A DNA stretch of 64,000 nucleotides, taken from contig NC_135830.1 in NCBI RefSeq assembly GCF_964213995.1, positions 13,702,001-13,766,000 on the forward strand, in the 5' to 3' direction. The notes under the pieces were generated by a model. It ran no database searches. It had not been told where the DNA came from and saw only the letters and a program-made list of their open reading frames with translations. This DNA is from Mustelus asterias (lineage: Eukaryota). Each line of letters opens with the position of its first letter. Position 1 is the stretch's first letter. Both the position numbers and the translations under genes were made by a program. Below, piece after piece: positions 18,975 to 58,815 of the stretch.

Positions 18975-20900
18975 AGAACATAGAACACAGAACAGTACAG
19001 CACAGAACAGGCCCTTCGGCCCACGAAGTTGTGCCGAGCTTTATCTGAAACCAAGATCAAGCTATCCCACTCCCTGTCATCCTGGTGTGCTCCATGTGCC
19101 TATCCGATAACCGCTAAAATGTACCTAAAGTTTCTGACTCCACTATCACTGCAGGCAGTCCATTCCACACCTTAACCACTCTCTGAGTAAAGAACCTACC
19201 TCGGGCATCCTTCCTATATCTCCCACCATGAACACTATAGTTATGCCCCCTTGTAGTAGCTCCATCCACCCGAGAAAATAGTCTTCGAACGTTCACTCTA
19301 TCTATCCCCTTCATCATTTTATAAACCTCTATTAAGTCTCCCCTCAACCTCCTCCGCTCCAGAGAGAACAGCCCTCGCTCCCTGAACCTTTCCTCATAAG
19401 ACCTACCCTCAAAACCAGGCACCATGCTGGTAAATCTCCTTTGCACTCTTTCCAGCGCTTCCACATCCTTCTTATAGTGAGGTGACCAGAACTGCACACA
19501 ATATTCCAAATGTGGTCTCACCAAGGTCCTGTACAGTTGCAGCATAACCCCACGGCTCTTAAACTCCAAACCCCTGTTAATAAAAGCTGACACACTGTAG
19601 GCCTTCTTCAAAGCTCTATCCACTTGAGCGGCAACCTTCAGAGATCTGTGGATGTGGACCCCAAGATCTCTCTGTTCCTCCACAGTCTTTGGAACCCTAC
19701 CTTTCACCCTGTAATCCACATTTAAATTTGTCCTACCAAAATGAATCACCTCACATTTATCAGGGTTAAACTCCATCTGCCATTTTTCAGCCCAGCTTTG
19801 CATCCTATCTATGTCTCTTTGCAGTCTACAAGAGCCCTCCACCTCATCCACTACTCCACCAGTCTTCGTGTCATCAGTAAATTTACTGATCCACCCTTCA
19901 GCCCCCTCCTCTCGGTCATTAATAAAAATCACAAATAGCAGAGGACCAAGCACTGATCCCTGCGGCACTCCGCTAGCAACCTGCCTCCAGTCCGAAAATT
20001 TTCCATCCACCACCACCCTCTGTCTTCGATCAGATAGCCAGTTACCTATCCAATCGGCCAACTTTGCCTCTATCCCACATCTCCTTACTTTCATCATAAG
20101 CCGACGATGGGGGACCTTATCAAGCACCTTACGAAAATCCATGTATATGACATCAACTGCCCTACCTCCATCAACACACTTAGTTACGTTCTCAAAAAAT
20201 TCTATCAAATTTGTGAGGCACGACTTGCCCTTCACGAATCTGTGCTGACTATCCGGATTAATCCGCATCTTTCTAAATGTTCGTAAATCCCATCCCTAAG
20301 GACCTTTTCCATCAACTCACCAACCACCGAAGTAAGACTTACCGGCCTATAATTACCAGAGTCATTTGTATTCCCTTTCTTAAACAGAGGAACAACATTC
20401 GCCACTCTCCAGTCCTCTGGCACCATCCCCGTGGACAGTGAGGACCCAAAGATCAAAGCCAAAGGCTCTGCAATCTCATCCCTTGCCTCCCAAAGAATCC
20501 TAGGATGTATTTCATCAGGCCCAGGGGACTTATCGACCTTCAGTTTATTCAAAACTGCTAGTACATCCTCCCTCCAAACATCTACTTCCTCCAGCCTATT
20601 AGCCTGTAACACCTTCTCTTCCTTAAAAACATGGCCCCTCTCCTTAGTGAACACTGAAGAAAAGTATTCATTCATCACCTCTCCTCTCTCTACTGACTCC
20701 ATTCACAATTTTCCACTACTGTTCTTGACTGGCCCTAACCTCACCCTGGTCATTCTTTTATTCCTCACATAAGAGTAAAAAGCCTTGGGGTTTTCCTTGA
20801 TCAGACCTGCCAAGGACTTCTTATGCCCCCTCCTAGCTCTCCTGAGCCCCTTTTTCAGCTCATTCCTTGCTAACTTGTAACCCTCAATCGAGCCATCTGA
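18975..20900 (-). mobile_element. 5'-truncated CR1 with near-intact RT, inserted within a SINE
   Basis: ORFs 19114-20268 and 20232-20702 (one frameshift) carry GVPQGSVLGP and KFTDDT; tail at about 18976. Confidence 0.95.
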
Positions 20901-23984: not shown

Positions 23985-24236
23985 TACCAAAAGATAAAAT
24001 GCTGGAAAATCTCAGCAGGTCTGGCAGCATCTGCAAGGAGGGGAAAAGAGCTAATGTTTCGAGTCCAGATGACACTTTGTCAAAGCTGACATTTCTAACT
24101 GAACTTTGACAAAGGGCCATCTGGACTCGAAACGTCAGCTCTCTGTCTCTCCTTACAGATGTTGCCAGACCTGCTGAGATTTTTCAGCATTTTCCCTTTT
24201 GGTTTTAGATTCCATCATTCGCAGTAATTTGCTTTT
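23985..24236. mobile_element. Palindromic non-autonomous Penelope-type element with 11-bp TSD
   Basis: About 100-bp inverted arms; ATCCCCAAGGT at 23974-23984 and 24237-24247. Confidence 0.8.
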
Positions 24237-30261: not shown

Positions 30262-30415
30262 AAAATACTGGAAAATCTCAGCAAGACTGACAGCATCTGT
30301 GGGGAAACCAACGTTTCAAGTCTGGATGATCCTTCATCAGATTTCCTGATTCGACTCACTGGCTCTGTTCTGTCTTCACAGATGCTGCCAGACCTGCTGA
30401 GATTTTCCAGTACGG
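30262..30415. mobile_element. Palindromic Penelope-type element with hammerhead-like core (30306-30343, minus)
   Basis: Minus strand CTGATGA-AGGATCATCCAGACTT-GAAA-CGTT. Confidence 0.65.
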
Positions 30416-31940: not shown

Positions 31941-32704
31941 TGTGAAGAAAGATTTTTTTTGGAATCTAAGGGAATGAAGGGCAATCGGGATACGTTTGGA
32001 AATTGATGTTGATTCCTGGGATTCGTCATGATCTCCTTAAATTGTGGAGGAGACTCCATGGGACATGGGAGCCAATCCTACTCCATTAATTCCGTTCCCT
32101 GCAGCACCAGATCTGATAGGGATCACCTCTGTTAAAAGCGTCGGAAGTGTTCTGAGGCATTGAATTCGAGGCAGCAGCATTTGTGGGGGAAAGTGATCAA
32201 ATGTTGCAAATGTCAGGTGTTCAGTTGATTTGCTTTAGACGTCATGAATACTTTTTCTCGAACATGTTATTACGAAACTTTAATGCAGTAGGAAGTATCA
32301 TTATTCATTTTGACAGGAAAAACCAGCAGAGACAATGTAATATCAATTGCTGTGGGCAAAAGATGGGCTTCTGGAGCCAGTCTAGTTGTTTCTCCAGTGA
32401 ACCGGATCTGCTTGCCCTGAGGTCATCACCGTGTTTCTGTAGTTCGGTGGTTATCACAAGAGCCAGGTTAATTCTGAAAATATCTGGTTAGAACGAGGAA
32501 TGATGGGACGTGTACATGATAGGATTTGAACTGCAGTTAGAAAATTCAAGTCCATCACCTTAATTCCTGGGCAGGGAATACAGTCTCACTGTTTGTAATC
32601 CTGCTATTTATATCATGATGCAAAGATGCCGGCGTTGGACTGGAGTGGGTACAGTAAGAATTCTCACAACACCAGGTTAAAGTCCAACAGGTTTAATTGG
32701 AATT

Positions 32705-32740
32705 GCGAGCTTTCAGGAGCACTGCTCCTTCATCAGGTTG
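32705..32740 (-). ncRNA. Minimal hammerhead ribozyme core in Penelope pLTR fragment
   Basis: CTGATGA-AGGAGC-AGT-GCTCCT-GAAA-GCTC; mutated duplicate at about 33767-33802. Confidence 0.7.
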
Positions 32741-32923
32741 TTCAAATCGGCAGTCAGAATTTCAGCCTGTGTGTGCTCTCAAAGGAGCCACTTGCACACA
32801 CGCTGCTTTACCCCAGCAACGTTTTCAATTGGAGATGTCTCTGCTCGTTGTTCATGATGAAAACGGAACCGCACACACTCCTGCACTCAATCTGAGCTGT
32901 TAGACCAAAACTTAAACCCATTT

Positions 32924-33005
32924 TGGCAGCAGTGGGATTCGAACACACGCCTTCGCAGAGACTGGAGTCTTAATCCAGCGCCTTAGACCGCTCGGCCACG
33001 CTACC
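32924..33005 (-). tRNA. tRNA-Leu(AAG), slightly degenerate
   Basis: GGTAGCGTGGCCGAGCGGTCTAAGGCGCTGGATTAAGACTCCAG...GTGTGTTCGAATCCCACTGCTGCCA; one T-stem mismatch. Confidence 0.85.
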
Positions 33006-33985
33006 ACGTTAAGCAGCATCGCAATCATGTTATTTAATGATAATGTTGCTGAAATTCATTAAAAGCAATTTAGCTTGGAAAGGCCATCAGGAAGCATGAG
33101 CCTGCTCCTTCACTGATTCAGGTAATTCTGAACTGCGTAACAAACAGAAATCATCTCACGCCAGAAACACAATGAGCTGCAGTGAAGGGCCGGCATCATT
33201 TAAACTGTCCTTAAGCTCGTCTCTTCCCAATTTCCTGCCAGAAATGACAAGGGAACCTCCTGTTGAATTTGCTCAGGGTCTGCACTTAAGGACACGAGGC
33301 GAAATTATGTTTTGTATCTTCATCCAGGCAATAACTCACATTTATTTTCAGAGTTTGGATGTGAGCAATAAATCTTCAATTCCAGACCAGTAATCTGAAC
33401 AGCAGGGAAAGAGTCAAACACACCAGACCAGCAATTTACAACCTGTTTTAGAATTTAATTTATCCACGCTGCTTTTCTTCCTTTAATTTTCACGCCACGT
33501 TCGCCACAAACAGCTTTCTCCTGAAAAATGGCGCCTTCTGTTTCAATGCCAGTGATGTGTAATTAATGAAAGCTCCAACAAGGTGAGACTTCTTACTGTG
33601 TTTACCCCAGTCCAACGCCGGCATCTCCACATCAGGAAATACAGTCTCACTGTTTGTAATCCTGTTATTTATATCATGATGTAAAGATGTCGGCGTTGGA
33701 CTGGAGTGGGTACAGTAACAATTCTCACAACACCAGGTTAAAGTCGAACAAGTTTATTTGTAATTACCAGCTTTCAAGAGCACTGCTCCTTCATCAGGTT
33801 GTTTAACTCGGCAGTCAGAAATGCAGCCTCTGTGTGCTCTCGAAAGGAGCCACTTACACACACGCTGCTTTACCCCAGCAACGTTTCAAGTTGGTAATGT
33901 CTCTGCTCGTTATTCCTGACGAAAACGACACCACACACACTCCTGCATTCAATCCGAGCTGTTAGACCAAAACTTAAACCCACGT

Positions 33986-34080
33986 TGGCAGCGGTGGGAT
34001 TCGAACCCACGCCTCCGCAGAGACTGGAGCCTTAATCCGGAGCCTTAATCCAGCGCCTTAGACCGCTCAGCCACGCTACC
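33986..34080 (-). tRNA. tRNA-Leu(AAG) with 13-nt tandem duplication in the anticodon arm (intron-like, 34030-34042)
   Basis: ...CTGGATTAAGG[CTCCGGATTAAGG]CTCCAG...; acceptor stem, T arm, A/B boxes and TTTT terminator intact. Confidence 0.85.
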
Positions 34081-34106
34081 GCGTTAAACCACATCGCAAT
34101 CATGTT

Positions 34107-34439
34107 TTGTTTTTTTAATACTTTTCCAATTCAATCAAATCAAATCCATTTCAGAGTCTCAACAAGTTGAGACATTTCAGATCCCGGCTGACAAGACAGG
34201 GCGAGCGACCAAAATCACCCTGTCCTGGGCCTGATCTACATGAGCCAAGCTGATTGGAGAAGGGGGGGGGGTGTTCCTCCTCCAAGACTTGAGTTTATTT
34301 GCATCTTAGCCCAAAGGCCGAGATGCCGCTTTTAAAAATTGCTTCATATGAAACATATGAAGCTTCAGTGTAACCTAATGACCTCAACCAAGTGCAGCAT
34401 CCAATCCATACGACACTAGATCTTAGCCAAAAGGCCGAA
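34107..34439 (-). mobile_element. U2 snRNA-headed short retroposon (SINEU-like)
   Basis: 5' TCGGCCTTTTGGCTAAGATCTAGTGTCGTAT matches the U2 5' end; second U2 piece at 34303-34323; A-rich tail; TSD AATCATGTT at 34098-34106 and 34440-34448; absent from the paralog at about 33020. Confidence 0.85.
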
Positions 34440-35629
34440 AATCATGTTATTTAATGATAATGTTCCTGAAATTCATTAAAAGCAATGGAGCTGGGAAAGG
34501 CCATCAGGAAGCATGAGCCTGCTCCTTCCCTGATTCAGGTAAGTCTGAACTGCGCAGCAAACAGAAATCATCTCACGTCAGAAACACAATGAGCTGCAGT
34601 GAAGGGCCGGCATCATTTAAACTGTCCTTAAGCTCGTCTCTTCCCAATTTCCAGCCAGAAATGACAAGAGAACCTCCTGTTGAATTTGCTCAGGGTCTTC
34701 ACTTAAGGACCATATTATGTTTTATATCTTCATCCAGGCAATAACTCACATTTGTTTTCAGAGTTTGGATGGGAGCAATAAGTCTCCAATTCCAGGCCAG
34801 TAATCTAAACAGCAGGGAAAGAGTCAAACTCTAACCACCAGACCAGCAGCTTATAGGGTGTTTTAGAATTTAATTTATCCCCGCTGCTTTTCTTCCTTTA
34901 ATTTTCACGCCAGACCACTTTCACCACAAACAGCTTTCTCCTGCAAAATGGCACCTTCTGCTTCAACACCATGATGTGTTCAGCCAATGACAACATACCA
35001 CGAACACTCCAGTGCAATTATCACTTTCGCTTCCGACGGTTCGAAACCGGACAGAAACGTTTCCAAATGCTTTTCAGTGGAGAGTGAGGGAAAAGTTTCA
35101 TTATTCAGTGTCAATATAAACAGCAAAATCTGACCCATTACCAGACAGATTTTACCTTGCAGCAACATCTCAATCGTGAGTACTTTGCAGCCTATCACTG
35201 CCCTTTTTCTGTGTTTGTTCTTGAACTGTGCACAGGTGAAATTTCCAGCTCTGATATAAACTTGCAAACCTCACTCGGCTGATTCTAATAGATCTGTTTT
35301 CGATCAGAGAGCAAATCAGATCATTATTAATGGTTTGCTGAGAGCAAATACTCTTATTTTCCTCAGCGGGAATTGAAACCAGACATCACTGGGGGAGTGC
35401 TGAACATGAACCATTGGACTGCCAGGGAAACCGGTGAACAGTGTTCTTCAAACTGACTTAACATATATCCCTTTGCTTCTATTTTCATCTCAGATCCTTT
35501 TCACTTGTGACACGTTTCTCCTTCAAAATGTCCTGTTTGGATGGAATATGATTGCCTCCTTCAGCTAATGACAACACGGATTGAGCTGGGTCATGGAATT
35601 GACAGTGAGGTGATATGGTCCCACAAGCT

Positions 35630-41193: not shown

Positions 41194-44013
41194 CTAAACC
41201 AATTTCTTTTCGTCCATGAACCTATCTACGGATCTCTTAAACGCCCCCAAACTAGGCGCATTTACTACTGATGCTGGCAGGGCATTCCAATCCCTCACCA
41301 CCCTCTGGGTAAAGAACCTACCCCTGACATCGGTTCTATAACTACCCCCCCTCAATTTAAAGCCATGCCCCCTCGTGCTGGATTTCTCCATCAGAGGAAA
41401 AAGGCTATCACTATCCACCCTATCTAAACCTCTAATCATCTTATATGTTTCAATAAGATCCCCTCTTAGCCGCCGCCTTTCCAGCGAAAACAATCCCAAA
41501 TCCCTCAGCCTCTCCTCATAGGATCTCCCCTCCATACCAGGCAACATCCTGGTAAACCTCCTCTGCACCCTCTCCAAAGCCTCCACATCCTTCCTGTAAT
41601 GTGGGGACCAGAACTGCACACAGTACTCCAAGTGCGGCCGCACCAGAGTTGTGTACAGTTGCATCATAACGCTACGACTCCTAAATTCAATCCCCCTACC
41701 AATAAACGCCAAGACACCATATGCCTTCTTAACAACCTTATCTACTTGATTCCCAACTTTCAGGGATCTATGCACACATACACCTAGATCCCTCTGCTCC
41801 TCCACACTATTCAAAGTCCTCCCGTTAGCCCTATACTCAACACATCTGTTATTCCTACCAAAGTGAATTACCTCACACTTCTCCGCATTAAACTCCATCC
41901 GCCACCTCTCGGCCCAACTTTGCAACCTGTCTAAGTCTTCCTGCAAACTACGACACCCTTCCTCACTGTCTACCACACCACCGACTTTGGTGTCATCAGC
42001 AAATTTGCTAATCCACCCAACTATACCCTCATCCAGATCATTAATAAATATTACAAACAGCAGTGGCCCCAAAACAGATCCCTGAGGTACACCACTTGTA
42101 ACCGCACTCCATGATGAATATTTACTATCAACCACCACCCTCTGTTTCCTATCCGCTAGCCAATTCCTGATCCAATTTCCTAGATCACCCCCAATCCCAT
42201 ACATCTGCATTTTCTGCAGAAGCCTACCATGGTGAACCTTATCAAACGCCTTACTAAAATCCATATATACCACGTCCACTGCCTTGCCCCCATCCACCTC
42301 CTTGGTCACTTTCTCAAAAAACTCAATAAGGTTAGTAAGGCACGACCTACCTGCCACAAAACCATGCTGACTATCACCTATCAATTCATTACTCTCCAAA
42401 TAACTATAAATCCTATCCCTTATAATTTTTTCCAACATCTTGCCGACAACAGAAGTGAGACTCACCGGTCTATAATTCCCGGGGAAGTCTCTGTTCCCCT
42501 TCTTAAACAATGGGACAACATTCGCTAACCTCCAATCTTCTGGTACTATACCAGAGGCCAACGACGACCTGAAGATCAGAGCCAGAGGCTCTGCAATCAC
42601 TTCTCTTGCCTCCCAGAGAATCCTTGGATAAATCCCATCCGGACCAGGGGATTTATCTATTTTCAGACCCTCCAGAATATCCTGCACATCCTCCTTATCA
42701 ACTGTAATACTGTCTATTCTACTCCCTTGCAACCCAGTGTCCTCCTCAGCTATATTCATGTCCCCTTGCGTGAACACCGAAGAGAAATATTGGTTCAATG
42801 CTTCACCAATCTCCTCCGGTTCCACACATAACTTCCCTCTGCCATCTATAACTGGCCCTAAACTTGCCCTAACCAACCTTCTGTTCTTGACATACCTATA
42901 GAACGCCTTAGGATTCTCTTTAACCCTATCCGCCAAAGTCTTCTCATGTCCCCTTTTAGCCCTTCTAAGCTCGCTCTTCAACTCCCTCTTAGCTAATCTA
43001 AAGCTTTCTAGTGCACTACCCGAGTGCTCACGTCTCATCCGAACATAAGCCTCCTTTTTCTTTTTAACCAACAAAGAAACTTTTTTGGTGCACCACGGTT
43101 CCCTAGCCCTACCAATTCCTCCTTGCCTGACAGGGACATACCTATCACAGACTCGCAGTAGCTGCTCCTTGAAAAAACTCCACATGTCGGACGTTCCCAG
43201 TCCCTGTAATCTCCTAGTCCAACCTATGTTTCCTAATTCTCTCCTAATAGCCTCATAATTACCCTTCCCCCAGCTAAAACCACTGGCCCGAGGTTCATGC
43301 CTATCCCTTTCCATCACTAAGGTGAACGTAACCGAATTGTGGTCACTATCACCAAAATGCACACCAACTTCCAAGTCTAGCACCTGGTCTGGCTCATTTC
43401 CCAGCACCAGATCCAATATAGCCTCACCTCTAGTTGGCCTGTCTACATACTGAGTCAAAAAACCTTCCTGCACGCTTTGAACAAAAACTGACCCCTCTAA
43501 CGAGCTAGAGCTATAACAATTCCAGTCAATATTAGTCAAGTTAAAATCCCCCATATCAATTGCCCTATTACTTTCACTCCTAAGCAGGATTGACTCCGCA
43601 ATCCTTTCCTCAACCTCTCTAGAACTTTTAGGAGGTCTATAAAAGACTCCCAACAGGGTGACCTCTCCTCTCCTATTTCTAATCTCCGCCCATACTACCT
43701 CAACAGATAAGTCCTCATCAAACCTCCTCTCTGACACTGTGATACAATCTCTGACCAATAATGCTACCCCTCCCCCTCTTCTACCTCCTTCCCTACTTCG
43801 ACTAAAACATTTGAACCCCGGGACCTGCAGCATCCATTCCTGCCCCTGCTCTATCCATGTCTCTGAAATAGCCACAACATCGAAGTCCCAGGTACTGATC
43901 CACGCTGCAAGTTCACCCACTTTATTGCGAATACTCCTGGCATTGAAGTATACACATTTCAAACCCTGCTCCACCCCACCTCTGCAATGCCGTGCATTGC
44001 AGTCCCCATCCAT
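41194..44013 (-). CDS. CR1 ORF2 (APE endonuclease + reverse transcriptase), 939 aa
   Basis: YFNARS, ISETW, GDFN and SDH endonuclease motifs; GVPQGSVLGP and FADD RT motifs. Confidence 0.97.
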   Translation of the reverse strand: MDGDCNARHCRGGVEQGLKCVYFNARSIRNKVGELAAWISTWDFDVVAISETWIEQGQEWMLQVPGFKCFSRSREGGRRGGGVALLVRDCITVSERRFDEDLSVEVVWAEIRNRRGEVTLLGVFYRPPKSSREVEERIAESILLRSESNRAIDMGDFNLTNIDWNCYSSSSLEGSVFVQSVQEGFLTQYVDRPTRGEAILDLVLGNEPDQVLDLEVGVHFGDSDHNSVTFTLVMERDRHEPRASGFSWGKGNYEAIRRELGNIGWTRRLQGLGTSDMWSFFKEQLLRVCDRYVPVRQGGIGRAREPWCTKKVSLLVKKKKEAYVRMRREHSGSALESFRLAKRELKSELRRAKRGHEKTLADRVKENPKAFYRYVKNRRLVRASLGPVIDGRGKLCVEPEEIGEALNQYFSSVFTQGDMNIAEEDTGLQGSRIDSITVDKEDVQDILEGLKIDKSPGPDGIYPRILWEAREVIAEPLALIFRSSLASGIVPEDWRLANVVPLFKKGNRDFPGNYRPVSLTSVVGKMLEKIIRDRIYSYLESNELIGDSQHGFVAGRSCLTNLIEFFEKVTKEVDGGKAVDVVYMDFSKAFDKVHHGRLLQKMQMYGIGGDLGNWIRNWLADRKQRVVVDSKYSSWSAVTSGVPQGSVLGPLLFVIFINDLDEGIVGWISKFADDTKVGGVVDSEEGCRSLQEDLDRLQSWAERWRMEFNAEKCEVIHFGRNNRCVEYRANGRTLNSVEEQRDLGVCVHRSLKVGNQVDKVVKKAYGVLAFIGRGIEFRSRSVMMQLYTTLVRPHLEYCVQFWSPHYRKDVEALERVQRRFTRMLPGMEGRSYEERLRDLGLFSLERRRLRGDLIETYKMIRGLDRVDSDSLFPLMEKSSTRGHGFKLRGGSYRTDVRGRFFTQRVVRDWNALPASVVNAPSLGAFKRSVDRFMDEKKLV

Positions 44014-44063
44014 GCATCCCTCACTTTCAGCCCCACTACTCAGGATCCCTCCCCCCCCCCGAA

Positions 44064-44993
44064 TCAGTTTAAACCTCCCTGCATGGCCTTAGCAAATTTA
44101 CCCCCCAGGATATTGGTCCCCTTCTGATTAAGGTGTAGACCATCCTTCTCATAGAGGTCACACCTTCCCCAGTACGAGCCCCAATTGCTTAAGTACCTGA
44201 ACCCCTCCCTCCTGCACCATCCCCTCAGCCATGAATTCAAACCTTCCCTCTCCCTATTCCTCTCTAAACTATCCCGTGGTACAGGCAAGAGTCCAGAGAT
44301 AACCACTCTGTCAGTCTTGGCCTTTAGTTTCCACCCCAACTCCATAAATCCCTGCCTAATATCCCCTTCCCCTATCCTCCCTATGTCGTGTGTCCCCACA
44401 TGTACAATAACTTGTGGTTTATCTCCCTCCCCCCTAAGAGTCCTGAATACCCTGTCAGACACATCCCGGACCCCAGCCCCTGGTAGGCAACACACCAACC
44501 CTGAGTCCCTACCTTTAGTTCCGACCCTCCTATCTGTCCCCTTAATTGTGGAGTCCCCAATCACAAGGCCCAGTCTTTTACAGCCCCTAACCACCTGAGC
44601 TTTCTCACTCGGCTCACCCCCAGAGATCTGCTCTCTATGCTCAGTTGATTCCTCCTCAACTGTAGCCTCCAGCACCGAAAACCTATTATGGAGGGGAACC
44701 GCCCCAGGGGATTGTCTTCCCGATTGCTTCTTACCCCTCCTCCTGGCATTGACCCAAGCCTCATTTCCAGGAGTTACTATTTCTCTATAACTCCTATCAA
44801 CTTCCACCTCCGCCTCCCGAATTATGCGGAGTTCCTCTACCTCCCCCTCCAGCTCCTTTACACGCTCCTCCAGAAGCTGCAATCTAATGCACTTCTTACA
44901 ACTAAAATCTCCTGAAACACTACTGGATTTCCTCACCACATACATCCCACAGGAGATGCAGCATACTGCCTGAACTGCCATCCCTGAAGCCAT
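44064..44993 (-). CDS. CR1 ORF1 (zinc finger/leucine zipper + SGNH esterase-like), 309 aa
   Basis: CISC...CKKC, coiled coil LLEERVKELEGEVEEL, IGDS, HVGTHD, DGLHLN; probable start MASGMAVQ at 44993. Confidence 0.93.
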   Translation of the reverse strand: MASGMAVQAVCCISCGMYVVRKSSSVSGDFSCKKCIRLQLLEERVKELEGEVEELRIIREAEVEVDRSYREIVTPGNEAWVNARRRGKKQSGRQSPGAVPLHNRFSVLEATVEEESTEHREQISGGEPSEKAQVVRGCKRLGLVIGDSTIKGTDRRVGTKGRDSGLVCCLPGAGVRDVSDRVFRTLRGEGDKPQVIVHVGTHDIGRIGEGDIRQGFMELGWKLKAKTDRVVISGLLPVPRDSLERNREREGLNSWLRGWCRREGFRYLSNWGSYWGRCDLYEKDGLHLNQKGTNILGGKFAKAMQGGLN

Positions 44994-45957
44994 TACCAGC
45001 AAGAAAAAAAGAAAACAAAAAACAAACCTTTCGGTTAACATCCGAACGCGCTGACGAATTGCACCACAGAGACTGAGACAGCAACTTTGCACGATATTCT
45101 AAACCAGGGTGTCAATGACTTCAATTATATTTCTACTGAACCTGTTCCAGAACTACAGCACGACCGTTTACAATCCTATATAAGTCTCTTTGGTTATTTT
45201 GATCCCGTAGTATTGCTGTGATGTAGCGGTTATTCCCTTTCTCCTACGGACATGCAGGTAAAATGAATCCATGTCTCTCATCACAAGAATTCAACGGGAG
45301 AGAAGGGAACTGACCACCAGAAGCCCAAGGAACCAATACTTTCCATTCAAACATCAATAACACCATTCACAGCTGCACCTCTGTCCAAATATTGTGATCC
45401 ATTTCCGTCAGAATTTGTTCCAAGATTAAATATTTACTGTTTCTTCCCCCTCATTTTGAAATGAGATTCGCTTCAATATACAACACAAATGGAATTGCAA
45501 ACCTGACGGACAAACAGTGGGAAACAAGTCACTGGGTAACACAAATCCCTGGGTGCTGATTTCCAGATTCACAACACTCAGCTTTTCACTCAAATGGAGG
45601 AATTTATCACTGAAAAGTTTTGGAAAGTTGGTCTGAATATTGTTTGTGGCTCACTCGTGTATTGTGTAAATGCCGCTCGAAGGTTCAGTGGGCGGGGTTT
45701 AAGCTGCCTTTTTTTTTCCTGAACCTGTGCTTGGTGTATTGGGATGTTTGAACCAACTCAGATCTTTTGTCCCAGAGATGTGCAGTAACCCACAGGTTGA
45801 AGCTGCAGTCGTCGCCGTCTGCTGGCAGCGAATGGGTGAATGGAGAGTTCGGGGTGAAATCCTGCTGCGTGTCCCTGTCTCACTCACTGTGGATATGTGG
45901 AAGAGAGAATCATTGATGGGGTTGTTTCGCCGACTGAAATGTGCTTTTCATAAAAAA

Positions 45958-47265: not shown

Positions 47266-49710
47266 TTACATTTGTACTTTAAAAAACTTCCATGTTTTTT
47301 GGTTTACAAAAGTGTCGATAACAGCATGTAAATCAACAGATCGAAGCATGTCTGATTCAATGTGCATGAGTGCCAGATGACTAGGTTTCTCATCGCTCAT
47401 TGTTGAGCGCAAATAGATTTTGATCCTCTTCAGTGCCGAAAATGAACACTCACCTGAACAGTTAGTGATCATTAAGGACAGATAAATTCTAAAGCAAATG
47501 TATGTATTTGGAAACACCTCGTGCAGTCGATCTCTTGCCAGAGCTCGATACATCCCAGTGACAGTGACATCATCATCGGATTGTCCTTGAATGTACTTCT
47601 GAAAGTGGACGTGCTCTTCCACAAAGGCCAAGTCAAAGTCGTCCGGATAAACTTGTATGAGGGTATTCGCTGCCTTTTTAAGTGCGTCGACATCAATATT
47701 GCAAATACGAGAAAGAAATCCAAATCGCTTGGACACAGATTTATATGCTTCAGTGCGTTTTTTAAGCTCTGCTGATAATTTGTCTAAGATCGGTAAGTAC
47801 ACGTTAATTTTGAAACTCTGGCGAGGTGAAAAATCTGTTGCCTGTGCTTTGTTTTCCTGGTACTAACTTTTCGCTTCCTTTGCGTTTCTTCTTTGTGAAC
47901 TGATGTCGCAGTCTTTGCAATGCCTTCTTGCTTAAAGTTCTCAAATGAGTCATTGATCCGGAGGTCTAAGATATAGGCCTCCAAAGACTGCAAAAGTCTC
48001 ACGCCTTCGTTAAGATATATTTCTGGGTTTTGTAAATTCAAGCTAGTTTTGTGGAATCGCTTCAAAATTGTTGCCCAAACGCTGAGAAGTATTCCATACT
48101 CCAGAGATTCCATCTTGCTCACAAGACCTCTCGCTTCTTGTCGCGTGTTTGACTTTTCATCTGCATTGTCAGCAATGCTTTCCAATTGTGATTTCACTTT
48201 CTCGTATCCCTGATTGAGGGCGGCCGCAGCACTTGCGTGAGCAGACCACCGAGTATCACTAAGTCTCTTCACAACTGCAAGATTCTTTCCAAGCTCACCC
48301 ACAAGTATTTCCCATCGGTGGGTTGAAGCACTGAAGAAATTGTACAACTGTTCAACAAAATCAAAAAAAGCAGCAGCTTTCGGAACACAATCCACTGCTG
48401 AATGACCGACAAGGTCCAACGAGTGAGCAACGCAAGGAATATAGTCAGCTACTATATTTCTCTCCTGTATTTTAGCTTGAAGACCATTACACTTGCCACT
48501 CGTGTTGCAGGCGTTGTCGTATGATTGACCTCTGCAGTTCTCTAAGTCTATTTTATCTGTTTCTAAAAACATCAGAATACTCTCGGCAAGTTGTTCACCA
48601 CTGTGACCTCTGCAATTCAGAAATATGACGCATCTTTCAATAGGACCACTCTCACGCACATATCGAAAAATGCAAGACAGCCGATCCGCGTGTGAAATAT
48701 CAGGGGATGAATTCACAGATATTGAAAACTATTTGGCTTCTTTGAGTTCCGAAATAATTTTCTCTGACACCTTTTGTCCAAGTATTTAAATCAGCTCATC
48801 GCATACTGTGGATGAAAGGTAGGAAACAGAGCCTTTACCCTTATTTCATTCATTTCAATATGAGTTGCCAAAAAAAGGATCGAATTGCGCTAACAATTCT
48901 AGTGTCCCTAGAAAATTGCCATTGTTTGGTGAACCACTACACTCGTTGTGTCCCCTAAAGGCTAGTCCCCGCTCAGCAAGAAATTTAATTGTAGCAACAA
49001 CCCTTTCCAGAAGTGCTTTCATGTAATCACGTTCTGACTGGTATTGTCGAGTAATCAAGCGGTTTACACATTCAATACCTCGAGACCTTGTAGTGAGGGC
49101 AATGGTCGCATCCCAATGGCTTTGGCTGTTTTCATGACTTTCGAATCTTTGACTTGCATTTTTCCAGTCAGAGAAGCCATGCTTCGAAAAAGCATGGTCT
49201 TCACTTGAAAACAGTTTGCAGTTAAAACAGAATGCCTTACCTGTGCTTGGAGATTAGCACAGCCAACTTCTCCTGATTTTCTCGCCATTTGTAAGGGAGC
49301 GGTAAAACATGGACTTACTAAAGTAACGTTTCTGTTTAGCGTCATATTTGATAGACTTCACAACACTGGCATTCATGTTCCAACAGACTTCGCTCCCTGT
49401 CTTTAACCAGTATACGGTGATGTCTTCTGTAATTTTGTCAGGCGGCAGGCCACGTGCCCAAATCACTCTCCATCGACTTCGACGACTTGTCTGCGATTTC
49501 TTCATCATCGGATCCGGAATGAACTTCACGTTGCGAATCTTCGCCTACTTTTCCATCGTCCACATCACCGTCCACATCATCAAGTACTGCTTCATTTGCT
49601 GGCTTAAAAACTTGTCAAGCTTGCATGTATTCCTTCGTAGACTTTCTTGTACTCTCTTGGTCTCTTTCCTTTTTTGTGCTCTGCTTTTATGTTTGTATTC
49701 AATAGTAGCC
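47266..49710 (-). pseudogene. hAT transposase pseudogene (ORF pieces 49254-49529, 48855-49058, 47784-48716, 47266-47802)
   Basis: FLAERGLAFRGH, GNFLGTLELLA, RGQSYDNA, CVAHSL, TRWS, and the dimerisation motif ECSFSALKRIKIYLRSTM. Confidence 0.9.
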
Positions 49711-57585: not shown

Positions 57586-58448
57586 GGTTCGTGATTGGAC
57601 ATGAACATGTTTCAGATGTGCTGGTGCTTCTAGTCTTATATCTAAAAATAAACTCAGATCAGAGGCATCTTGCAATTATTGCGAAATTGTTCCTCAGTGC
57701 CGCGATTGGCTTGTCTCCCTGAGATGATGTCAGCTGTTGCCCAATCATCTAAATGTTTTATACGGCTGAACCACATCAATCACATTCCACCCCTGGTTGC
57801 TTTTACCTGGCGTTCTCTCTCTTCCTCGGTTTCACTTTGTCACTCATTCTGTCTCTACCTCGGTTGAACTTGCCTTCCTTCGAACTCTTTCCTGAGGAAG
57901 ATCATTCTCTCTAATGAAAGTGAAAGATCAAATAAATGTTTTTAAATCAGGTATTATTAAGGGGCATGAGCATAAATGAAAGGTTACTGTCTTAATTACA
58001 CTGGGCGAACGTTGATACCCAACTTCATGTCGAGATGCAGTTCCAGTGGGACTGCTCTTGTACCGTTAAGGTACTTAATTAACCCAGTCAATATTTTGTA
58101 CCCAGAAAATGTGAAACAACTGAGTGTGCCTATGACATTATTTCACTTTAAAAACGTGTCCCCTGACAGCGAGGCATCTGATACAGAAAGGTTAAGTGTA
58201 CAAATAGATGATGGCATTCACTTGGAAGATCTGTGGGTTGTGTGAATGGCATCGCAAAATGGTTGGATTTGATCCAGAAGTAATCTGACCGCCAAAAGTC
58301 AAATTTCTCGACAGTGGCAATCATTGACCTCAGTGAGGGAAAACCATTCAGATGAGGCACAATGTCACGTTCACTATCTGTGCATTTTTTATGAAATTCA
58401 ACTCCATGTGCTTTCCTGACACCAAACTCTTGACTATCGACCTGTGGC

Positions 58449-58487
58449 AGCATTTGTATGAGGCCCAATAGACCCTCGCTCATTGTG
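58449..58487 (-). promoter_or_regulatory. 23-RSS of V segment 5
   Basis: CACAATG + 23 nt + ACAAATGCT. Confidence 0.88.
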
Positions 58488-58815
58488 GTTCTCAGTGCAC
58501 AATAATACACGGCGCTGTCTGTCATCTTCAAATCTTTCATGGACAAGTGAAAAGTGTTTTGTGCTTGCATGTGATTCCCGCTGAAGAGCTCAAGGCCGGG
58601 GGCCGTCTTCTTGTACCCGTAACTATCGGCTCTGAGCAGATACTGAGGAGCATGGAGTGAAGACTGCCGATACCAGAACAGGCCATATACTCTAGCTAAA
58701 CTCTGTACAGGGTAACTGCAGGGTATTGCTGAACCTTCACCCCCTGTTGCTTCAACTCTTGGTTCTGATTGGGACACTGAATCTCAATTACTCATCTCTG
58801 AATATAAACAATAGA

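What the first reader, a model, noticed from the sequence alone, without database searches (positions are those of the whole stretch)
34098..34448. U2 snRNA-headed, poly(A)-tailed short retroposon (SINEU-like) 26 bp upstream of a tRNA-Leu
Seen: a 333-bp insert missing from the duplicated paralog at about 33020, bounded by a perfect 9-bp TSD (AATCATGTT). On the minus strand it starts with U2 nt ~9-39 (TCGGCCTTTTGGCTAAGATCTAGTGTCGTAT) and repeats U2 nt 7-27 internally (34303-34323), where the repeat overlaps an ATGCAAAT octamer. It contains hairpins (GCTTCATATG-AAA-CATATGAAGC; GTCTCAAC-AA-GTTGAGAC; GACAGGG...CCCTGTC) and ends in ATTAAAAAAACAAAA. Known: snRNA-headed SINEs (SINEU) were described from crocodilians. 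The U2-targeting non-LTR families Keno (Tx1) and Utopia insert near U2 nt ~38, about where U2 identity stops here. Inference: either an independently evolved shark U2-SINE, or a non-autonomous partner of a U2-targeting LINE that is transcribed from U2 genes and retroposes elsewhere.
Basis: partly seen in the sequence, partly recalled or inferred. Interest (0 to 1): 0.9.

Follow-up and report, generated by a model that had tools for sequence, protein, structure and literature searches.

The report
U2-headed short retroposon in a shark
A 333-base mobile element whose front end is copied from the U2 splicing RNA has inserted next to a tRNA gene in what looks like a shark genome, a kind of element described so far only from crocodilians.

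Summary
A 333-bp insert (34107-34439, element on the minus strand) is missing from the 92%-identical paralog. It has a perfect 9-bp target-site duplication, an ATTAAA signal and a short A-rich tail. Its first 32 nt match U2 snRNA positions 9-39 at 29 of 31. A second U2 piece (positions 7-26, 19 of 20) lies 117 nt further in. The sense strand folds into a chain of hairpins (z -5.2), and helix 1 has 8 G.U among 23 pairs.

It is a retroposed, non-autonomous element with the architecture of crocodilian SINEU-1. U2 identity stops at nt 38/39, the published Keno/Utopia insertion site in U2 genes. That favours a head inherited from a U2-resident Tx1-type LINE.

I could not fetch a second copy, so family status rests on indirect evidence. 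Exact 31-mers of the element occur in 23 runs from 13 coded organisms, some far too small to assemble single-copy DNA. The scan has noted this before on other DNA of the same genome: 77 unchecked notes hold "U2 snRNA", and four describe U2-headed Tx1 LINEs.

My literature searches found no snRNA-headed SINE reported from cartilaginous fish.

The parts
34107..34439 (-). The retroposed element, 333 bp: U2-derived head, spacer hairpins, second U2 piece, structured body, A-rich tail
   Evidence: Missing from the paralog at 33023-33031. Whole-element RNA fold -118.9 kcal/mol, z -5.16, against -96.6 and z -3.51 for the opposite strand.
34098..34106 (.). Target-site duplication, copy at the element's 3' side (AATCATGTT on the + strand)
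34440..34448 (.). Target-site duplication, copy at the element's 5' side
33023..33031 (.). Empty target site in the 92%-identical tandem paralog
34408..34439 (-). U2-derived head. Element nt 2-32 correspond to U2 model positions 9-39 (29 of 31 identical). Element nt 1 aligns to position 8 and is a mismatch.
   Evidence: Rfam U2 alignment; 20-mer search
34372..34436 (-). Hairpin 1: the U2 head paired with the sequence that follows it. 23 pairs, of which 8 are G.U.
   Evidence: -25.8 kcal/mol, z -3.47; pair count
34341..34363 (-). Hairpin 2: perfect 10-bp stem with a 3-nt loop
   Evidence: z -5.14; I2
34329..34340 (-). AATTTTTAAAAG between hairpins 2 and 3. It contains a T5 run, which is a Pol III stop. 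Rfam laid it on the U2 Sm-site region.
   Evidence: the Sm-like reading is inference
34301..34326 (-). Hairpin 3, containing the second U2 piece (34304-34323, U2 model positions 7-26, 19 of 20)
   Evidence: z -3.57; D1, I5
34294..34304 (-). ATGCAAAT octamer (34297-34304) overlapping an internal AATAAA (34294-34299)
   Evidence: no function shown
34254..34285 (-). Hairpin 4, with a C10 run in its loop (34262-34271)
   Evidence: z -3.10; I4
34178..34238 (-). Hairpin 5, a long stem
   Evidence: -32.9 kcal/mol, z -3.58; I1
34156..34173 (-). Hairpin 6, small and not significant on its own
   Evidence: z -1.31
34107..34119 (-). ATTAAA (34114-34119) running into the A7-C-AA tail (34107-34116)

Best explanation
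This is one copy of a non-autonomous, poly(A)-type short retroposon with a head derived from U2 snRNA. It has the architecture of the crocodilian SINEU class, above all the SINEU-1 subfamilies that carry two U2 pieces.

Shown here:
- The element entered the spacer of a tandem tRNA-Leu unit after that unit had duplicated.
- It did so through an RNA intermediate. It has an A-rich 3' end after ATTAAA, a 9-bp target-site duplication, no terminal inverted repeats, and an intact empty site in the paralog.
- On the window's + strand the inferred first nick lies between GTT and ATT. That leaves a T-ended primer that can pair with the A-rich tail.

Inferred:
- The enzyme was supplied in trans by a LINE of the L1 group, most likely a Keno-like Tx1 element.
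- The head is the U2 nt 1-38 stub that lies upstream of such a LINE when it sits at its specific site in a U2 gene. Source copies would then be transcribed by RNA polymerase II from a U2-type external promoter, or by read-through, rather than by Pol III.
- The second, internal U2 piece records an earlier round of 5' addition, as in SINEU-1.
- This copy is one of many in this genome and in related species.
- The hairpin chain, which is specific to the sense strand, is a property of the RNA. It may serve stability or recognition by the LINE protein.
For: Retroposition: insert, TSD and empty sites; tail and ATTAAA.

U2 origin: 29 of 31 at model positions 9-39. Second piece 19 of 20. Two sites in the window against 0.00 expected.

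Not Pol III: three internal runs of four or more T, at element nt 8-11, 102-106 and 226-229. No tRNA or other Pol III-type head was found.

Link to Keno/Utopia: U2 identity ends at position 39. U2 sequence downstream of Utopia starts at nt 39, and Keno has identical 3' flanking U2 sequence (PMC4640811 section 6). [quoted passage not shown]

Architecture like SINEU-1: recurrent 5' additions of U2 pieces, a poly(A) tail and internal oligo-T (PMC4494074).

Multi-copy and multi-species (indirect): 23 runs from 14 studies and 13 coded organisms hold 0.07-0.53 of the 30 sampled 31-mers. No run of bases identical to the U2 consensus exceeds 20, so these words cannot come from real U2 genes. Six holders have only 33-147 million letters.

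Leads only: 77 unchecked first-stage notes in this genome hold 'U2 snRNA'. Many titles give sizes of about 330 nt, two U2 pieces and TSDs of 15-18 bp. Four notes describe U2-headed Tx1 or Keno-like LINEs.

RNA-level structure: sense strand z -5.16 against antisense -3.51, a 22 kcal/mol difference; 8 G.U among the 23 pairs of helix 1.

Not crocodilian: the window's CR1-like ORF2 has its best named relatives in Scyliorhinus torazame, Hemiscyllium ocellatum and Hypanus sabinus.
Against: I saw no second copy.

The family evidence is indirect. In closely related species the orthologous locus could in principle give small shares.

The first-stage notes are unchecked AI readings.

The Rfam U2 match is below the gathering score (26.4 against 46).

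The tail is short and impure (A7-C-AA).

An internal AATAAA (element nt 141-146) would be awkward for a polyadenylated Pol II transcript.

No listed holder is on record as RNA, so expression is unknown.

No L1- or Tx1-type LINE lies in the window. Both LINE pieces there are CR1-like and share no tail with the element.

The agreement with the nt 38/39 boundary is a single observation. The insertion site here is not a U2 gene.
Confidence: 0.62

Rival explanations
1. One-off chimeric retrocopy. A LINE reverse transcriptase copying some polyadenylated RNA switched template to a U2 snRNA, as in the known snRNA/L1 and snRNA/Alu chimeras of mammals. That would give a single insertion and no family.
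For: No second copy in the window, and none could be fetched. U1 and U2 chimeras made by template switch, and poly(A)-tailed, TSD-flanked U1 or U2 retrocopies, are on record (PMC4494074 Discussion).
Against: It needs two separate U2 pieces 117 nt apart. Exact 31-mers of the element occur in 23 runs of 13 coded organisms, including runs of 33-147 million letters that could hardly assemble a single-copy locus. Many unchecked notes describe the same roughly 330-nt double-U2 structure elsewhere in this genome. U2 identity ends at the Keno/Utopia site rather than at an arbitrary point.
Confidence: 0.06
2. A real multi-copy SINEU-like family, but with no link to U2-resident LINEs. The U2 pieces were added by template switching onto free U2 snRNA. 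The family is mobilised by an ordinary, non-specific L1-type LINE and transcribed from chance flanking promoters.
For: Kojima proposes template switch for the 5' additions in SINEU (PMC4494074 Discussion). The insertion here is not in a U2 gene. Its nick site (T-ended primer, then A/T-rich) looks like a non-specific L1-type site; the motif is recalled, not tested. TSD lengths in the other notes vary from 15 to 18 bp, as with L1.
Against: The head ends at nt 38/39. Four unchecked notes report U2-headed Tx1 or Keno-like LINEs in the same genome.
Confidence: 0.22
3. Retrocopy of a cellular, structured, U2-derived non-coding RNA gene of about 320 nt. The dispersed copies would be its processed pseudogenes, not a self-propagating element.
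For: Strong structure specific to the sense strand, rich in G.U. An AAUUUUUAA stretch between two hairpins was laid by Rfam on the Sm-site region of U2. It resembles an Sm site, but the Sm motif is recalled and the match lacks the usual G.
Against: Nothing in Rfam beyond the U2 fragments. The branch-point-recognition region is mutated at model position 35. ATTAAA plus an encoded A tail is typical of retroposons, not of snRNAs. There is no expression evidence.
Confidence: 0.08

Closest known systems
SINEU-1 of crocodilians, especially the subfamilies with two U2-derived pieces (Kojima 2015, PMC4494074; Results and Discussion read)
   Same: A short element (under 500 bp) without coding capacity. 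U2-derived 5' head and a second U2-derived piece inside it. Poly(A)-type tail and TSD. Internal oligo-T that argues against Pol III. No recognisable internal promoter.
   Different: The host looks like an elasmobranch. The paper states that no SINEU was detected outside crocodilians. This copy looks young (perfect TSD, absent from a 92% paralog), whereas SINEU-1 stopped moving more than 80 million years ago. I could not compare body sequences, because no SINEU consensus was available and supplements are closed. Common descent or independent origin therefore remains open. No Mariner-type target is seen here.
SINEU-3 of crocodilians
   Same: A 5' U2 fragment of 32 bp, almost the same length as here. 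Tandem insertions that sandwich a TSD are reported for SINEU-3. First-stage notes report tandem copies for this shark element (unchecked).
   Different: SINEU-3 is essentially an internally deleted U2 gene, with a further 83 bp of U2. Here the rest of U2 is at best faintly recognisable (Rfam 26.4 bits in all).
Keno (Tx1 clade) and Utopia (NeSL clade), LINEs specific for U2 snRNA genes (PMC4640811 section 6; PMC4494074)
   Same: Their insertion point leaves U2 nt 1-38 upstream, and the element's U2 identity ends at position 39. Crocodilian Tx1 families related to Keno carry U2 heads shared with SINEU.
   Different: The element encodes nothing and is not inserted in a U2 gene. No Keno or Utopia sequence of this genome could be compared.
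snRNA retropseudogenes and snRNA/L1 template-switch chimeras of mammals (as summarised in PMC4494074 Discussion)
   Same: snRNA sequence at the 5' end of a TSD-flanked, A-tailed insertion.
   Different: Those are independent single events. Here there are two U2 pieces and indirect evidence for many copies with the same body.
[quoted passage not shown]
   Same: The element sits in the spacer of a tandem tRNA-Leu array, 26 bp upstream of the gene.
   Different: This is a single observation here. Other noted copies are not described as lying beside tRNA-Leu. No sequence comparison was possible.

Membership tests
SINEU (snRNA-headed SINEs, Kojima 2015) | 5' head derived from U1 or U2 snRNA | tested here: met
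   U2 model positions 9-39, 29 of 31 identical. Two U2-like sites in the window against 0.00 expected.
SINEU (snRNA-headed SINEs, Kojima 2015) | Short (under 500 bp), non-coding, poly(A)-tailed retroposon with target-site alteration | tested here: met
   333 bp. Longest stop-free stretch 48 codons. ATTAAA plus A7-C-AA tail. 9-bp TSD and empty site.
SINEU (snRNA-headed SINEs, Kojima 2015) | A family: many copies that share the same non-snRNA body, not a sum of independent chimeras | tested here: inconclusive
   No second copy was seen. The only support is indirect: element-specific 31-mers in 23 runs of 13 coded organisms, and unchecked notes.
SINEU (snRNA-headed SINEs, Kojima 2015) | Recurrent 5' addition of snRNA-derived pieces (SINEU-1 pattern) | tested here: met
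   Second U2 piece, model positions 7-26, 19 of 20, 117 nt downstream of the first.
SINEU (snRNA-headed SINEs, Kojima 2015) | Sequence homology of the body to crocodilian SINEU consensus sequences | not testable with these tools
   No Repbase or Dfam here; figures and supplements of PMC4494074 are not held.
SINEU (snRNA-headed SINEs, Kojima 2015) | Mobilisation by Tx1-clade LINEs (shared target preference, shared heads) | not testable with these tools
   No Tx1 LINE in the window; both LINE pieces are CR1-like. The only leads are unchecked notes of U2-headed Tx1 LINEs.
Non-autonomous derivative of a Keno/Utopia-type LINE resident in U2 genes | 5' U2 fragment ending at the LINE's insertion point (U2 nt 38/39) | tested here: met
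   Identity ends at model position 39. Published site from PMC4640811 section 6.
Non-autonomous derivative of a Keno/Utopia-type LINE resident in U2 genes | 5' and 3' ends shared with the autonomous LINE | not testable with these tools
   No such LINE sequence was available.
Non-autonomous derivative of a Keno/Utopia-type LINE resident in U2 genes | Insertion into U2 genes at the specific site | tested here: not met
   This copy lies in a tRNA-Leu spacer. No U2 gene is in the window. One copy cannot speak for the family.
Classical Pol III SINE (tRNA, 7SL or 5S head) | Head with an internal Pol III promoter and no internal terminator | tested here: not met
   No tRNA, 7SL or 5S match in the element. 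Three internal runs of four or more T.

The most novel reading that the evidence does not exclude
Elasmobranchs carry a young, perhaps still active, retroelement system that lives off U2 genes. A Keno-like Tx1 LINE sits at U2 nt 38/39 and borrows the external U2 promoter. It has spawned a structured SINEU-type element of about 330 nt, with thousands of copies across several species.

The element's RNA has a U2 5' stem and an Sm-like site between hairpins, and so may pass through the snRNA export and re-import route. The family may also favour the spacers of tRNA gene arrays, as Dewa does.

If so, this would be the first system in which the open question of how promoter-less, snRNA-headed SINEs are transcribed could be tested directly.
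Probability: 0.25. Interest if true: 0.75.

Novelty: new member of a known kind. Interest (0 to 1): 0.58.

Why it matters
snRNA-headed SINEs are the one SINE class without a known promoter, and they have been described from crocodilians only. There, most families have been dead for tens of millions of years. The author could not say how they are transcribed or, for SINEU-1, where the body came from (PMC4494074).

A second occurrence in cartilaginous fish, apparently recent, would matter in three ways. It would show that the class is either ancient or arises repeatedly wherever U2-targeting Tx1 LINEs live. It would tie the U2 head to the stub left by the LINE's insertion site. And it would offer young copies and possible master loci for 5'-end mapping and retrotransposition assays.

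For genome annotation, it is a repeat family that standard SINE finders, which look for Pol III heads, will miss or mislabel as U2 pseudogenes.

Tried and rejected
Fetching further copies failed by every route.
- blastn of the element against the window gave only self-hits and the internal 19-nt repeat.
- Two exact-pattern scans of metagenome contigs and one of genome contigs gave 0 hits. These collections are not expected to hold shark DNA, so the blanks mean little.
- The search of earlier findings by sequence gave nothing.
- Protein detour: the 48-codon stop-free stretch over the head found no candidate. The 47-codon stretch over the body found 2 proteins with E up to 0.001 among 1.84 billion representatives. 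Both are long TPR-repeat proteins that match by chance, and I rejected them.
So there are no depth profile, no flanks of other copies and no RNA ends.

Literature. In none of these searches did I see a paper reporting snRNA-headed SINEs in cartilaginous fish.
- 'SINEU' with 'snRNA': 45 papers, 15 listed. Nearly all concern SINEUP RNAs; only PMC4494074 is relevant.
- 'SINEU' with 'shark': 14 papers. Only the review PMC5381603 is relevant, and the passages I read mention SINEU for crocodilians only.
- Six terms on SINEU, cartilaginous fish and Tx1: none of the 20 papers listed holds 'SINEU'.
- 'SINEU' with 'U2 snRNA' and 'retrotransposon' from 2016 on: 3 papers, listing only.
- 'snRNA-derived' with 'SINEs' and 'shark': 1 paper, the same review.
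- Three sequence strings of the element: 0 papers.
- Repbase and Dfam could not be consulted. Supplements of PMC4494074 and PMC4640811, which hold alignments and junctions, were closed.

Considered and rejected:
- DNA transposon or MITE: no terminal inverted repeats, and an A tail.
- Pol III SINE: no such head, and internal T runs.
- CR1-type partner: both LINE pieces in the window are CR1-like and share no tail with the element.
- The ATGCAAAT octamer as a working snRNA enhancer: one 8-mer in 333 bp on two strands has about a 1% chance expectation (my arithmetic), and nothing tests it. I give it no weight.
- An Sm site: suggested only by Rfam's placement. It lacks the usual G and is kept as speculation.

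Two calls were my own slips: a search term that was too short and a minus-strand region given to the repeat finder. Both were corrected and resent.
Full report
WHAT IS THERE

The window holds a tandem pair of units of about 1.06 kb, each with a tRNA-Leu(AAG) gene on the minus strand. Outside gaps the units match at 717 of 779 aligned columns, 92.0%.

Unit B carries 333 bp (34107-34439) that unit A lacks. The sequence AATCATGTT stands on both sides of the insert (34098-34106 and 34440-34448) and once in unit A (33023-33031). A third, older paralog of the flank (74.9% identity) is also uninterrupted at that point.

Read on the minus strand, the insert ends in ATTAAA followed by A7-C-AA. Its 3' end lies 26 bp upstream of the tRNA-Leu gene, in the same orientation. 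It has no terminal inverted repeats and no stop-free stretch longer than 48 codons.

This is the signature of target-primed reverse transcription of a polyadenylated or A-ended RNA. The event took place after the tandem duplication.

THE U2 PIECES

Rfam's U2 model aligns to 34289-34446 on the minus strand. It scores 26.4 bits, below the gathering score of 46, with E 0.025 for 6 kb and 0.12 for 30 kb. Nearly all the signal is at the 5' end. Model positions 9-39 match at 29 of 31, with mismatches at positions 29 and 35. Position 35 lies in the branch-point-recognition stretch, so this is not a working U2.

Model positions 1-7 were laid on the flank and TSD. Only the final TT of the TSD coincides with U2 positions 6-7. 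That could be microhomology at the 5' junction, or chance.

A second piece at 34304-34323 matches model positions 7-26 at 19 of 20. A 20-mer from the head, allowing up to 3 mismatches, finds these two sites and nothing else in 64 kb; 0.00 are expected from shuffles. No other snRNA-like sequence is in the window.

STRUCTURE

The sense strand folds at -118.9 kcal/mol (z -5.16; 0 of 100 shuffles do as well). The opposite strand gives -96.6 kcal/mol (z -3.51).

Folded piece by piece, the element is a chain of six hairpins. Five of them have z at or below -3.1.

In the first hairpin the U2 head pairs with the 30-odd bases that follow it. Eight of its 23 pairs are G.U, and on the other strand these would be A-C mismatches. 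This is why that helix disappears in the antisense fold. It suggests that the structure belongs to the RNA of the sense strand. Without further copies I could not test covariation.

Between hairpins 2 and 3 lies AAUUUUUAAAAG. Rfam placed it on the Sm-site region of U2. It resembles an Sm site but lacks the usual G; the motif is recalled, and I treat this as speculation.

The element has three runs of four or more T (nt 8-11, 102-106, 226-229) and an internal AATAAA at nt 141-146 overlapping the ATGCAAAT octamer at nt 136-143.

IS IT A FAMILY?

The window holds no second copy. The public collections within reach gave nothing, but they are not expected to hold shark DNA.

What remains is indirect.

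(a) Sequencing runs. The look-up of sequencing runs lists 23 runs, from 14 studies and 13 coded organisms, that hold 0.07 to 0.53 of the 30 sampled 31-mers of the element.
- The longest run of bases identical to the U2 consensus is 20, so none of these words can come from a genuine U2 gene. They are specific to this element.
- Six holders have only 33, 60, 97, 115, 143 and 147 million letters. For a vertebrate genome that is a small fraction of one-fold coverage. A single-copy locus would hardly be covered, let alone assembled into contigs, whereas a repeat with many copies would be. This is my inference. The library kinds are guesses by the tool, and my recollection that Logan drops k-mers seen only once is not checked.
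- Taking share = (1-d)^31, the shares correspond to roughly 2% divergence (0.53), 4.6% (0.23) and 8% (0.07) from the nearest sequence in those runs (my arithmetic).
- No holder is on record as RNA. Two small-share runs are guessed to be RNA.

(b) Earlier notes. The scan has noted the same kind of element many times on other DNA of this genome. These are AI notes that nobody has checked. I use them as leads, not as support.
- 77 first-stage notes hold 'U2 snRNA'.
- The titles shown describe elements of about 322-371 letters with two U2 5' ends, hairpin chains, poly(A) and TSDs of 15 to 18 bp.
- Three describe tandem copies beside a tRNA-Gln gene.
- Four describe U2-headed Tx1 or Keno-like LINEs.

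WHICH ORGANISM?

The window's intact CR1-like ORF2 (939 aa, endonuclease plus reverse transcriptase) has these best named relatives:
- Scyliorhinus torazame: 68% identity over 67% of the query.
- Hemiscyllium ocellatum: 77% over 37%.
- Hypanus sabinus: 46% over 51%.

That fits an elasmobranch and speaks against a crocodilian. This matters, because in a crocodilian the finding would be already known.

COMPARISON WITH WHAT IS KNOWN

Kojima (2015; PMC4494074, Results and Discussion read) described SINEU in crocodilians. The features reported are:
- short poly(A) retroposons with U1- or U2-derived heads;
- in SINEU-1, repeated 5' additions of U1 or U2 pieces;
- internal oligo-T and no recognisable promoter;
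- the statement that no SINEU was found outside crocodilians.

The element here has the same architecture.

Kojima and Jurka (2015; PMC4640811, section 6 read) state that U2 sequence downstream of Utopia insertions starts at nt 39, so nt 1-38 are expected upstream, and that Keno has identical 3' flanking U2 sequence. The element's U2 identity ends at position 39, within one base of that boundary. The one-base ambiguity arises because a T could belong to either side.

A free template switch onto U2 snRNA has no reason to stop there. I therefore rate a head inherited from a U2-resident LINE as more likely than a plain template switch. This rests on one boundary in one copy.

[quoted passage not shown] The present copy sits in just such a spacer. 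With about ten tRNA genes in the window, a random insertion would land within 26 bp upstream of one in well under 1% of cases (my arithmetic). One case does not make a preference.

MECHANISM, WITH WHAT IS SHOWN AND WHAT IS INFERRED

Shown:
- Insertion through an A-ended RNA, with a 9-bp TSD, after the duplication of the tRNA-Leu unit.
- A U2-derived head and a second U2 piece.
- A predicted structure specific to the sense strand.
- No Pol III-type head, and internal T runs.

Inferred:
- Trans-mobilisation by an L1-group LINE, probably a Keno-like Tx1. The two LINE pieces in the window are CR1-like and 70% identical to each other. They share no tail with the element.
- Pol II transcription of master copies from a U2-type external promoter, or by read-through.
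- Membership in a family of many copies present in several related species.

VERDICT

The element is best filed as a new member of the SINEU kind, in a lineage where my searches found none in print. Repbase, Dfam and the papers' supplements were out of reach and may already hold it.

Family size, partner LINE and transcription remain to be shown.

Noticed in passing
window 32700-34900, and about 10690-11144: The tRNA-Leu gene sits in a tandemly duplicated unit of about 1.06 kb, with the two copies 92.0% identical. A third, much older copy of the flank is 74.9% identical. The window as a whole is a tRNA gene cluster with about ten tRNA hits.
   Followed up: partly
the tRNA-Leu gene next to the element, in unit B: Compared with its paralog, this tRNA-Leu carries a 13-base duplication in the anticodon-arm/variable-arm region, which ARAGORN and Rfam read as a longer tRNA.
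   Followed up: no
window 33590-33720: A long inverted repeat (a hairpin of about 100 nt) in the spacer between the two tRNA-Leu units. It gives a weak mir-628-like Rfam hit (21.7 bits against a gathering score of 75). It could be a MITE or a foldback element.
   Followed up: no
window 41194-45092, minus strand: An apparently intact CR1-like LINE. ORF2 is 939 aa with endonuclease and reverse transcriptase domains. The upstream ORF1 is 342 aa with a GDSL-lipase-like domain just below Pfam's cut-off (32.6 bits against 32.9). A second, truncated copy of the same group lies at 19114-20268 and is 70% identical.
   Followed up: partly
protein P0005: A protein filed as a hypothetical protein of the bacterium Carnobacterium maltaromaticum is 62% identical over 98% of the CR1-like ORF2. 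It is encoded on a 3-kb contig. The likely explanation is fish or host DNA contaminating a bacterial assembly.
   Followed up: no
window 47266-48716, minus strand: Remnant of a hAT transposase: the C-terminal dimerisation domain, E 4.7e-09.
   Followed up: no
window 58148-58777, minus strand: An open reading frame with an immunoglobulin V-set domain, E 2e-12. It may be an exon of an immune-receptor gene.
   Followed up: no
window 30265-30413 and 23999-24190: Palindromic stretches that give weak mir-216-like hits on both strands (27-29 bits against a gathering score of 53.5). They are probably foldback repeats rather than microRNA genes.
   Followed up: no
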